A stretch of 62,938 nt of DNA, filler included, from Octopus bimaculoides (GCF_001194135.2; 5 parts of 5 records of this genome joined end to end with filler, not necessarily neighbours in it), one strand, 5' to 3'. Shown: positions 60,729 through 61,648, counted from the whole stretch's first letter. Numbers and translations: made by a program. The notes: a model not told the origin generated them from the letters alone.

Positions 60729-61259
60729 ACATAATTACCAACCAAGTGTGATCTCCTAATCAGAACAGTGCTACTGATGTTTATAGCCCCAGGAAGACAT
60801 CTCTTCTAGCTGGCTAATGACACACATACACACATTCTGTGTCCGATTAGTATTTGCGAGGGGAGGTCATCGATCCTATCTCTAGCTTTACGTGATACAC
60901 ACAAACTCGAGTTTCTGGGTGGTTACCCATCCTCAGTGTGTGTTAATCACCAGCTATTGATGAAAACTCATTTCACTCACAAAATACTAAATGCTTTTTC
61001 CAGTGACAAACTGTTGCTGATCTCGAAAAAGGAGAAATATGCTATATTAAATCTCTGAGCAAGATACAAACATTAGCAATATGGAATTGTAACATATAAT
61101 TGCCAACCAAGTGTGACGTCCTATACAGGACAGTGCTACTGACATTTATAGCTCCAGGAAAACATCTCTCCCAGCTGGCTAATGACACACATTCTGTGTC
61201 CGATTAGTATTTGTGAGGGGAGGTCATTGCTGCCATCTCTAGCCTTACGTGATACACAC
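60729..61259 (-). mobile_element. Retrozyme-like tandem repeat, ~1.5 units of 357 nt
   Basis: 61092-61259 repeats 60729-60902; contains an intact hammerhead fold; no ORF. Confidence 0.8.
60897..60943 (-). ncRNA. Type I hammerhead ribozyme, fully paired fold
   Basis: ACACACA-CTGAGGA-TGGGT-AACC-ACCCA-GAAA-CTCGAG-TT-TGTGTGT: 7-bp stem I, 5-bp stem II with tetraloop, palindromic stem III, GUU cleavage triplet (cut between 60904 and 60903). Confidence 0.88.
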
Positions 61260-61648
61260 TGTTTATATCTCACTCAGAGATTTAATATAGCTTATTTCTC
61301 TTTTTGCGAGACCTGCGACAGTTTGTTGCTGGGAAAAGCATATAGGATTTTGTGAGTGGAATGAGTTTGCATCATTGGCTGGTGATTATGCTGAGGATGG
61401 GTGACCACTCAAAAACTTGAGTCCGTGTGTATCATGTAAGGCTACAGATGGAAGCAATGATCTTCCTTTGCTAACAGTAACTTGACACAGAATGTGTGTC
61501 ATTAGCCAGCTGGAAGAGATGTCTTCCTGTGGCTATATGGCTATAAACATCAGTAGCACTGTCCTGTATAGGATGTCACACTTGGTTGGCAATTATATGT
61601 TACGATTCCATATTGCTACTGTTTATATCAGAGATTTAATATAGTCTA
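61260..61648 (+). mobile_element. Inverted retrozyme-like copy, ~1.08 units of 360 nt
   Basis: Reverse complement of the 60729-61259 unit; GTTTATATC recurs at 61261 and 61621. Confidence 0.8.
61391..61430 (+). ncRNA. Degenerate type I hammerhead ribozyme
   Basis: CTGAGGA-TGGGT-GACC-ACTCA-AAAA-CTTGAG-TC-CGTGTGT; G12 changed to A and stem I 5' arm shortened. Confidence 0.65.

What the first reader, a model, noticed from the sequence alone, without database searches (positions are those of the whole stretch)
60729..61648. Retrozyme-like ~360-nt hammerhead repeat in tandem and head-to-head inverted arrangement
Seen: a non-coding unit of 357-360 nt, present as ~1.5 tandem copies on the minus strand and ~1.08 copies on the plus strand, diverging from 61260 within one gap-free contig. 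The minus copy has a fully paired type I hammerhead (7-bp stem I, CUGAGGA core, 5-bp stem II, GAAA, palindromic ACUCGAGU stem III, GUU site; pair 10.1-11.1 is U-A rather than the usual G-C). Established: metazoan non-LTR retrozymes and Penelope pseudo-LTRs are short tandem repeats with minimal type I hammerheads whose palindromic stem III favours dimeric self-cleavage, and some produce circular RNAs. Inference: this is a cephalopod retrozyme family able to yield ~357-nt linear or circular RNA and mobilised by Penelope-like RT. I cannot tell from the sequence whether it has been described.
Basis: partly seen in the sequence, partly recalled or inferred. Interest (0 to 1): 0.88.

Follow-up and report, generated by a model that had tools for sequence, protein, structure and literature searches.

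The report
Decayed hammerhead retrozyme insertion, head-to-head
A roughly 357-base non-coding repeat carrying a hammerhead self-cutting RNA motif sits in a TA microsatellite as two copies facing outwards, the footprint expected of a known kind of parasitic element (a retrozyme) copied in by Penelope-like machinery; it is real and neatly informative, but an old, inactive member of a known class.

Summary
A non-coding unit of 357 nt lies at 60731-61259 on the minus strand (1.48 units) and at 61260-61644 on the plus strand (1.08 units), head-to-head, with TA-rich microsatellite on both sides. One complete type I hammerhead lies at 60943-60897 (minus). All core nucleotides are present, with a 7-bp stem I, a 5-bp stem II and the palindrome ACUCGAGU as stem III. 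Pair 10.1-11.1 is U-A.

A descriptor search finds exactly this one site. Chance gives at most 5e-4 per piece. Rfam models do not detect it. The plus-strand copy's hammerhead is dead (G12 to A, stem I strand deleted).

In unit coordinates:
- The left arm starts 1-3 nt after the predicted cut site.
- Both outer ends fall in the two longest A/T runs of the unit.
- Flipping the left arm joins it to the right arm with only 21-23 nt missing.

This fits one oligomeric RNA, its 5' end made by the hammerhead, reverse-transcribed from both strands of a cut (TA)n target. That is a Penelope-type or twin-priming insertion of a non-autonomous retrozyme. The copies differ by 10-15%, so the insertion is old. 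With one live ribozyme, this locus cannot release a monomer.

No relatives could be retrieved. Family-level claims and the cephalopod origin remain untested. I rate it a new member of a known kind.

The parts
60621..60730 (.). Left flank: composite (TA)n/(CA)n/TATG microsatellite. Presumed left half of the target site.
   Evidence: TRF period-2 array 60621-60733; sequence read.
60731..61259 (-). Left arm: 1.48 tandem units in the sense of the hammerhead. It covers unit positions 2-357 (61259->60904) and then 1-165 (60903->60731). Its 3' end abuts the microsatellite; its 5' end is at the central junction.
   Evidence: the repeat finder D3/D4; blastn self-match, m 358-529 against 1-164; alignments A2.
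60892..60950 (-). Complete type I hammerhead. The 47-nt core is 60943->60897. Stem I continues beyond a 2-nt UA bulge with 5 more pairs (GUGAU/AUCAC). The core is C3 U4 G5 A6 G7 G8 A9; stem II is UGGGU/ACCCA with loop AACC; then G12 A13 A14. Stem III is A-U and C-G with loop UCGA, giving the palindrome ACUCGAGU.
   Evidence: It is the only descriptor hit in the piece, and chance gives at most 5e-4. Rfam gives no hit.
60903..60904 (-). Predicted self-cleavage site: after H17 = U (60904) and before U1.1 (60903), triplet GUU.
   Evidence: Position follows from the descriptor hit and the standard hammerhead numbering. Cleavage itself has not been tested.
61258..61261 (.). Head-to-head junction 61259|61260. 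The left arm starts at unit position 2 (position 4 if the shared 'AC' is given to the other arm), which is 1-3 nt after the cut site. The right arm starts at unit position 189 (or 187). There are 2 nt of microhomology (AC, 61258-61259).
   Evidence: Sequence; alignments; unit coordinates.
61260..61644 (+). Right arm: 1.08 units, covering unit positions 189-357 and then 1-219. Its last 25 nt repeat its first 31 nt (25/25 matches, with a 6-nt gap). Its 3' end abuts the right microsatellite.
   Evidence: the repeat finder D5, I7-I11; blastn.
61391..61436 (+). Inactivated hammerhead of the right arm. CUGAGGA is kept. G12 is changed to A (GAAA has become AAAA). The 5' strand of stem I is lost through a 5-nt deletion. 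There are C>U changes in stems II and III, one of them at the CpG of the palindrome.
   Evidence: Coordinates; alignment A2 columns 330-373. It is not returned by the descriptor.
61645..61675 (.). Right flank: (TA)n/TATG microsatellite running to the end of the piece. Presumed right half of the target site.
   Evidence: TRF array 61647-61673; sequence.
60731..60903 (.). Outer terminal inverted repeat. Unit positions 1-165 of the left arm mirror 61425-61590 of the right arm.
   Evidence: the repeat finder I8-I11, I13; L2 against Ra is 85% identical.

Best explanation
This is the fossil of one retrotransposition event of a non-autonomous, hammerhead-bearing element: a metazoan non-LTR retrozyme, meaning a tandem unit resembling a Penelope pseudo-LTR.

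Proposed mechanism, with each step marked shown or inferred:
1. A source array elsewhere was transcribed into an oligomeric RNA. (Inferred.)
2. The hammerhead cut this RNA at least at its 5' end, while internal sites stayed uncut or were religated. (Inferred from the left arm starting 1-3 nt after the predicted cut site.)
3. A Penelope-like RT/GIY-YIG enzyme supplied in trans cut both strands of a (TA)n microsatellite. (Target shown. Enzyme inferred from published PLE biochemistry.)
4. Each exposed 3' end primed cDNA synthesis on an internal A/T tract of the RNA. One primed at unit position 219 and stopped near 189. The other primed at position 165 and ran to the RNA's 5' end. (Geometry shown. 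Priming inferred.)
5. The two cDNAs were joined at a 2-nt microhomology, with the loss of 21-23 nt of template. This gave the head-to-head arrangement with both 3' ends outwards. (Geometry shown.)
6. The copies have since decayed by roughly 4-8% each. One of the two hammerheads has been destroyed. (Shown.)

The locus is therefore dead. With a single intact ribozyme it cannot release a unit-length RNA.

The ribozyme has a 2-bp stem III with a palindromic loop, and its predicted monomer ground state is inactive. It would be expected to cut only as a dimer of adjacent copies or with protein help.
For: - **Repeat anatomy and unit coordinates:**
- **Hammerhead:** all invariant core nucleotides are present in type I topology. 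It is the unique hit in the piece, and chance gives at most 5e-4.
- **No coding capacity:**. GC is 40.1%.
- **Flanks:** both are TA-rich microsatellite. About 10% of the piece is (TA)n.
- **Left arm 5' end:** it lies at unit position 2-4. About 2% of positions lie within 3 nt of the cut site.
- **Outer ends:** they lie at positions 165 and 219, inside or at the edge of the two longest A/T-only runs of the unit (160-167 and 209-218).
- **Continuity:** flipped, the left arm is continuous with the right arm apart from positions 166-188. A gap this small would arise by chance about 13% of the time.
- **Published parallels:**
  - PLE insertions are partial tandems that often have an adjacent inverted 5'-truncated copy. 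(TA)n is a frequent preferred target reported for the Naiad clade, which lacks canonical hammerheads, and a similar bias was hypothesised for Neptune (PMC8557442).
  - A purified PLE protein cleaves and extends both strands of AT-rich DNA and initiates RT internally (PMC11167929).
  - Metazoan retrozymes are 170-400 nt, low-GC, non-coding tandem units with type I hammerheads. PLEs are proposed as their mobilisers (PMC7229834; bioRxiv 10.64898/2026.07.22.740005).
- **Age:** the copies are related in a star-like way, with 6, 10 and 13 private changes in about 165 sites. Transitions exceed transversions. This fits decay after a single event.
Against: - Only one locus is available, and every coincidence listed was noticed after the fact.
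- No other copy of the family, and no autonomous partner, could be retrieved.
- Rfam hammerhead models do not match.
- Pair 10.1-11.1 is U-A. G-C is reported as highly conserved (PMC4209133).
- The hammerhead fold is 10 kcal/mol worse than an alternative in which ACUGAG pairs with CUC-AGU.
- The template would have kept two internal hammerhead sites uncut.
- For the one PLE tested in vitro, hammerhead cleavage was not needed for insertion, and RT started at a site not homologous to the target (PMC11167929).
- The offset between the two 3' ends (48-54 nt) is longer than the published 30-40 bp 'tail'.
- The inverted junction lies in a short contig of a gapped draft assembly. It cannot be checked against reads.
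Confidence: 0.65

Rival explanations
1. The two arms are independent cDNAs. Each was primed at one of two fixed internal RT start sites of the family (unit positions 165 and 219), as in the Penelope 'tail' model, possibly on two different RNAs held by a dimeric RNP. On this view they are not one template copied by twin priming. It keeps the same class of element and the same enzyme and differs only in the priming step.
For: A purified PLE initiates RT at two adjacent internal sites, on both strands alike. The stretch between the two sites is the 'tail', present at one end of insertions (PMC11167929, PMC8557442). Here the right arm carries 48-54 nt beyond the left arm's end.
Against: Published tails are 30-40 bp. 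The near-continuity of the two arms (only 21-23 nt missing) would then be a coincidence, at about 13%. One locus cannot show that the sites are fixed.
Confidence: 0.2
2. This is a fragment of an ordinary satellite or tandem array. It was rearranged at the DNA level by inversion plus a small deletion. The hammerhead is a relic with no role in how the locus arose.
For: Hammerhead-bearing units are known as satellite DNA in newts, cave crickets and schistosomes (PMC7229834, PMC2837043). An inversion with a 21-23 nt loss reproduces the observed geometry.
Against: One inversion breakpoint would have to coincide exactly with the edge of a 2.6-unit block and with the ribozyme cut site. The block is short. 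Both its sides are bounded by the same kind of microsatellite, and its ends lie in the A/T tracts of the unit.
Confidence: 0.1
3. The inverted junction is an assembly artefact. On this view two separate copies of the family were joined in a short contig of a draft assembly.
For: The piece is a gapped draft scaffold. Its start, its gap and its end all lie in (TA)n. The contig that holds the repeat is only 1055 bp.
Against: The arms share no sequence at the join apart from 2 nt. A repeat-mediated mis-join would therefore have no k-mer to follow. The arms are 80-90% identical and out of register, so this is not a fold-back artefact. The resulting geometry is the one expected from known biology.
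Confidence: 0.05
4. The hammerhead-like motif is not a working ribozyme and never was. The repeat would then be a plain non-autonomous retroposon.
For: No Rfam hit. Pair 10.1-11.1 is U-A. Stem I is a (CA)n/(TG)n tract, which is low-complexity sequence. The alternative fold is favoured by 10 kcal/mol. There is no covariation evidence.
Against: All eleven invariant core positions and three correctly placed helices are present. Chance gives at most 5e-4. The motif sits in exactly the kind of repeat where such ribozymes are known. A copy begins 1-3 nt after the predicted cut site.
Confidence: 0.08

Closest known systems
Metazoan non-LTR retrozymes (Cervera & de la Pena 2020, PMC7229834; e.g. Mytilus, Acropora, axolotl)
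   Same: A non-coding tandem unit within the 170-400 nt range, low in GC, without LTR, PBS or PPT, carrying one type I hammerhead per unit. Stem I pairs the two ends of the unit.
   Different: There are only 1.5 + 1.1 copies and one live ribozyme. The arrangement is head-to-head inverted, which that paper's main text does not mention ('inverted' occurs 0 times). Pair 10.1-11.1 is U-A. Expression and circles are untested.
Penelope-like element insertions and their pseudo-LTR hammerheads (PMC8557442, PMC4209133, PMC11167929)
   Same: A partial tandem plus an adjacent inverted 5'-truncated copy, a (TA)n / AT-rich target, a hammerhead inside the repeat, a short palindromic stem III, and one 3' end longer than the other.
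   Different: There is no RT/GIY-YIG ORF; one unit follows another directly. Helix II is 5 bp with a U-A first pair, whereas PLE min-HHRs have 6-8 bp with an unpaired base before G10.1-C11.1. The offset between the 3' ends is 48-54 nt rather than 30-40.
Newt satellite 2 / axolotl retrozyme hammerheads
   Same: Units of about 330-350 nt, with a helix III too short for monomer activity, so that cleavage needs two adjacent copies (PMC7229834).
   Different: No sequence similarity was tested or is claimed. Those families form long arrays with very high copy numbers.
Twin priming of LINE-1 (Ostertag & Kazazian 2001; cited from my own knowledge, not read here)
   Same: An inverted 5' segment and a direct 3' segment that are adjacent in the template, with a small loss and microhomology at the inversion junction and both 3' ends facing outwards.
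   Different: The enzyme family differs: a GIY-YIG PLE shown to cut and extend both strands, not an APE-type LINE. Priming is on internal A/T tracts rather than on poly(A).

Membership tests
Hammerhead ribozyme, type I | Invariant core: C3 U4 G5 A6 N7 G8 A9, G12 A13 A14, A15.1-U16.1, H17 not G | tested here: met
   CUGAGGA ... GAAA ... U|U read directly and required by the descriptor that returned the site.
Hammerhead ribozyme, type I | Three helices around the core, with helix I open and helices II and III capped | tested here: met
   Stem I is 7 bp, plus a 2-nt bulge and 5 more bp. Stem II is 5 bp. Stem III is 2 bp with a 4-nt loop.
Hammerhead ribozyme, type I | G10.1-C11.1 pair, reported as highly conserved (PMC4209133) | tested here: not met
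   The pair is U-A. Compensatory variants at this pair do occur in cricket satellite hammerheads (PMC2837043).
Hammerhead ribozyme, type I | Match to a curated covariance model (Rfam hammerhead families) | tested here: not met
   No hammerhead family at E<=10, either on the whole piece or on 60870-60970.
Hammerhead ribozyme, type I | Stem covariation among copies | tested here: inconclusive
   Only one intact motif and one decayed motif are available. The single stem II change in the decayed copy gives G-U. No other copies were found.
Hammerhead ribozyme, type I | Self-cleavage at the predicted site | not testable with these tools
   The only indirect hint is that a copy starts 1-3 nt after the site. 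The monomer's active fold is -15.8 kcal/mol against an MFE of -26.0.
Metazoan non-LTR retrozyme | Non-coding tandem unit of about 150-450 bp, low in GC | tested here: met
   The unit is 357 nt, with 1.48 tandem units and GC 40.1%. The longest ORF is 57 aa, with no protein relatives.
Metazoan non-LTR retrozyme | A hammerhead in every tandem unit, so that a monomer can be excised (the definition of 'active' in bioRxiv 10.64898/2026.07.22.740005) | tested here: not met
   The left arm has one intact hammerhead. The right arm's is inactivated and lies on the other strand.
Metazoan non-LTR retrozyme | A multi-copy family in the genome, expressed as linear and circular RNA | not testable with these tools
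   No eukaryotic genome or transcriptome collection is available. DNA and protein searches returned nothing.
Penelope-like (PLE-type) insertion | Partial tandem, plus an inverted 5'-truncated copy next to the 5' end | tested here: met
   compared with the description in PMC8557442.
Penelope-like (PLE-type) insertion | AT-rich or (TA)n target | tested here: met
   (TA)n/TATG tracts abut both outer ends. As in the literature, a target-site duplication cannot be read in a microsatellite.
Penelope-like (PLE-type) insertion | A 30-40 bp 'tail' present at one end only | tested here: inconclusive
   One arm extends 48-54 nt further than the other. With one locus, fixed start sites cannot be shown.
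Penelope-like (PLE-type) insertion | An ORF with RT and GIY-YIG endonuclease (autonomous element) | tested here: not met
   There is no ORF above 57 aa in the repeat, and one unit follows another directly. The element is therefore non-autonomous, if it is mobile at all.

The most novel reading that the evidence does not exclude
The locus preserves a complete footprint of both-strand (twin-primed) Penelope-type integration of a linear, oligomeric retrozyme RNA whose 5' end was made in vivo by a hammerhead with an unusual U10.1-A11.1 pair. Suppose the family's copies generally begin at the cut site, end in the two A/T tracts inside (TA)n, and often lie head-to-head. That would be insertion-site evidence for three points. 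First, Penelope machinery mobilises retrozymes. Second, the template can be a ribozyme-processed linear oligomer rather than a circle. [quoted passage not shown] That last role is still unclear for PLE hammerheads (PMC8557442), and no reads beginning or ending at the cut site were detected for the anole PLE (PMC11167929).
Probability: 0.3. Interest if true: 0.6.

Novelty: new member of a known kind. Interest (0 to 1): 0.36.

Why it matters
Two questions about animal retrozymes and Penelope-like elements remain open. One is which enzyme moves retrozymes and from what template (circle or linear oligomer). The other is what the hammerhead is for. The published link between the two families rests on co-occurrence and on sequence similarity to pseudo-LTRs.

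A single insertion cannot settle either question. It does, however, supply three explicit, countable predictions that a BLAST survey of the source genome could test within hours:
- 5' ends at the cut site.
- 3' ends in two A/T tracts within (TA)n.
- Head-to-head pairs that are contiguous in the template.

If the source really is a cephalopod, it would also add that class to the taxa with retrozymes. No paper in the searchable library reports hammerheads or retrozymes in cephalopods.

Tried and rejected
**Rfam.** I ran cmscan at E<=10 on the whole piece and on a 101-nt slice. No hammerhead family matched. The only hits are microRNA models on (TA)n/(CA)n low-complexity sequence, far below their gathering scores, which I regard as artefacts.

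**Searches for relatives. All returned nothing.**
- An alignment of the one ORF that is open in both arms.
- A 955-aa concatenate of all six-frame fragments of at least 25 aa. This gave 7616 word candidates, none with E<=0.01.
- A 20-mer conserved in all three copies, scanned in viral, metagenome and prokaryotic genome contigs.
- A degenerate hammerhead pattern, scanned in the same three collections.
- Sequence strings searched in the full text of papers. One search returned nothing. One search returned one unrelated paper, in which the 15-nt string ACCCAGAAACTCGAG occurs in an RNA-interference study of osteoprotegerin.

I did not run the search of protein representatives or the look-up of encoding contigs. 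They draw on the same protein collection, which had already shown no window-derived ORF.

**Other checks.**
- Covariation in the long hairpin at unit positions 81-166, using three copies: 24 pairs and 0 compensatory changes. This is uninformative.
- tRNA/SINE head: ARAGORN found none.
- Whole-unit fold: z = -2.2, only mildly more structured than shuffles.
- A nested dimer cofold cannot represent the double-hammerhead, because the intermolecular stem III crosses stem I. I therefore computed only the 8-mer self-duplex energy, -10.7 kcal/mol.
- I considered and rejected a reading in which the U after A9 is the unpaired extra base typical of PLE min-HHRs. That would leave an extra A before G12, and the two bases simply pair.
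- A target-site duplication cannot be read in the microsatellite.

Full report
**1. What is in the sequence**

The usable piece is 59271-61675, with an assembly gap at 60175-60620. The finding lies in the gap-free stretch 60621-61675.

The repeat finder gives two direct-repeat families with spacings of 365 and 357 nt (D3 and D4). It also gives a set of long inverted pairs (I7-I11, I13) that link 60731-61259 to 61260-61629. blastn of the two arms against each other, and of the left arm against itself, confirms a unit of about 357 nt.

I numbered the unit from the predicted ribozyme cut. Position 1 is U1.1 and position 357 is H17. In that numbering:
- The left arm, read on the minus strand from 61259 to 60731, covers positions 2-357 and then 1-165 (1.48 units).
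- The right arm, on the plus strand from 61260 to 61644, covers positions 189-357 and then 1-219 (1.08 units).

TRF does not list the period because there are fewer than two tandem copies.

**2. The hammerhead**

On the minus strand at 60943-60897 the sequence reads ACACACA CUGAGGA UGGGU AACC ACCCA GAAA CUCGAGU U UGUGUGU.
- Every invariant core position is present: C3 U4 G5 A6 G8 A9, G12 A13 A14, A15.1-U16.1 and H17 = U.
- Stem I has 7 pairs. After a 2-nt UA bulge it continues with 5 more (GUGAU/AUCAC), so the motif spans 60950-60892.
- Stem II has 5 pairs. Its first pair is U-A rather than G-C.
- Stem III has 2 pairs and a UCGA loop, which together form the palindrome ACUCGAGU.

A descriptor search that I wrote returns this site and no other on either strand of the piece. 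The descriptor requires CUGANGA, stem II, GAAA, stem III, UH and stem I. Among 20,000 first-order Markov sequences of the same size and composition, 0.05% have any hit to the lax descriptor. None has a hit with stem I of at least 7 bp and stem II of at least 5 bp.

Three points count against it:
- Rfam's covariance models find no hammerhead, even at E<=10 on a 101-nt slice.
- G10.1-C11.1 is described as highly conserved (PMC4209133), although compensatory variants of it occur in cricket satellite hammerheads (PMC2837043).
- The predicted ground state of the isolated 62-nt motif is an alternative fold in which ACUGAG pairs with CUC-AGU. That fold has -26.0 kcal/mol, against -15.8 for the hammerhead fold.

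The palindrome would form an 8-bp intermolecular helix of -10.7 kcal/mol. This is the standard argument that such motifs cut as dimers of neighbouring copies (PMC4209133, PMC7229834). Alternatively they may need protein, as shown for an anole PLE hammerhead (PMC11167929).

The right arm's motif (core 61391-61424) is dead. G12 has become A, five bases of the 5' strand of stem I are deleted, and the CpG of the palindrome has become TpG.

**3. Nature of the unit**

- There is no ORF longer than 57 aa.
- Translations of the unit find no protein relatives.
- GC is 40.1%.
- There is no tRNA-like head.
- In the left arm, one unit is followed directly by the next, with no coding sequence between them.
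- The whole unit folds slightly better than shuffles (z = -2.2). Stem I closes the molecule, bringing the two cut ends together.

All of this matches the published definition of metazoan non-LTR retrozymes: low-GC, non-coding tandem units of 170-400 nt with type I hammerheads (PMC7229834).

**4. What the arrangement says about how it arose**

Four features stand out.

(a) Both outer ends abut TA-rich microsatellite, at 60621-60730 and at 61645 to the end of the piece.

(b) The two outer ends are at unit positions 165 and 219. They fall in, or at the edge of, the two longest A/T-only runs of the unit: AATTATAT at 160-167 and ATTTAATATA at 209-218.

(c) The inner end of the left arm is at unit position 2. 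It is at position 4 if the shared dinucleotide AC at 61258-61259 is assigned to the right arm. Either way it lies 1-3 nt after the predicted cleavage site. Only about 2% of positions are that close.

(d) If the left arm is flipped, it reads straight into the right arm. Only positions 166-188 (or 166-186) are missing.

Features (c) and (d), together with the 2-nt microhomology, are the geometry of twin priming as described for LINE-1 inversions (Ostertag & Kazazian 2001, cited from my own knowledge). In that model one RNA is copied from its 3' part by a primer from one target strand. A primer from the other strand anneals just upstream and copies the RNA to its 5' end. The two cDNAs then meet head-to-head.

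The Penelope literature supplies the matching enzymology and genomic signature:
- PLE insertions are partial tandems that often have an adjacent inverted 5'-truncated copy. (TA)n is a frequent preferred target of the Naiad clade, and such a bias was hypothesised for Neptune (PMC8557442).
- A purified PLE protein cleaves and extends both strands of AT-rich DNA and starts RT internally in the RNA (PMC11167929).

A closely related alternative is that the two arms were primed at two fixed internal start sites, the PLE 'tail'. The offset here is 48-54 nt, against the published 30-40 bp. One locus cannot decide between the two.

**5. Age and activity**

The three overlapping copies are 85-90% identical and related in a star-like way. 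They have 6, 10 and 13 private changes in about 165 shared sites. Transitions outnumber transversions, and each arm carries a small 8-nt slippage duplication. This fits copies that were alike at insertion and have decayed since.

With one live hammerhead, the locus cannot excise a monomer.

**6. Comparison with what is known**

The element works like a retrozyme mobilised by a Penelope-like element, and that proposal is already in the literature (PMC7229834; bioRxiv 10.64898/2026.07.22.740005). Neither of those two papers discusses inverted copies or tails for retrozymes, nor a (TA)n insertion target. 'Inverted' occurs 0 times in the main text of the first. In the second it occurs only in a reference title, and its single mention of microsatellites concerns satellite birth, not insertion targets. 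The insertion-level reading given here is therefore a modest addition.

No paper in the searchable library links hammerheads or retrozymes with cephalopods. PLEs are documented in cephalopod genomes (PMC8557442, PMC13282606).

I could not verify that the piece is cephalopod. From memory, a flanking repeat resembles an abundant octopus repeat. That is only a lead.

**7. Verdict**

It overreaches for this locus on three counts:
- The locus is a dead insertion, not a source of RNA.
- Ribozyme activity is unproven and the motif has atypical features.
- Family-level properties and host taxon are untested.

I file it as a new member of a known kind. Interest is moderate-to-low overall. The specific testable lead is that the 5' end of a transposed copy maps to the hammerhead cut site within a twin-primed, microsatellite-targeted insertion.

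Noticed in passing
59313-59451: A 139-bp unit that resembles a MITE. It has 26-nt terminal inverted repeats (88% complementary) and an internal 14-bp x2 tandem repeat (TGATAATAACAAAA). It lies directly after the (AT)n at the start of the piece.
   Followed up: partly
59791-60130 (minus strand): A stretch of about 340 bp bounded by (TA)n/(TG)n and (CA)n tracts. 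Its minus-strand start looks weakly like the A-box/B-box head of a tRNA-derived SINE. ARAGORN and Rfam give no tRNA. From memory, part of it resembles an abundant octopus repeat. This was not tested, and a paper-text search for such strings found nothing.
   Followed up: partly
60820-60835 and 61530-61545: There are two independent 8-nt tandem duplications inside the repeat copies: ACACACAT x2 in the left arm and TGGCTATA x2 in the right arm. They are probably replication slippage after insertion. The first explains the 365-nt against 357-nt spacing.
   Followed up: yes
59271-59315, 60131-60174, 60621-60669, 61657-61675: The start of the piece, both edges of its 446-N gap and its end all lie in (TA)n tracts. 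About 10% of the non-N bases are (TA)n. The assembly evidently breaks at these microsatellites, which limits confidence in long-range structure.
   Followed up: partly
60612-60750, 60112-60179: Rfam microRNA-family hits (mir-297, mir-3149, mir-4012, mir-1277 and others) all fall on TA/CA low-complexity sequence. They score 17-47 bits against gathering scores of 75-101, so they are artefacts.
   Followed up: yes
60897-60943 (minus strand): The core sequence CUGAGG (N7 = G) is complementary to the stem III palindrome CUCGAG. This gives an inactive alternative hairpin that is 10 kcal/mol more stable than the hammerhead fold. It could act as a built-in switch that keeps monomers, or circles, uncut.
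   Followed up: partly
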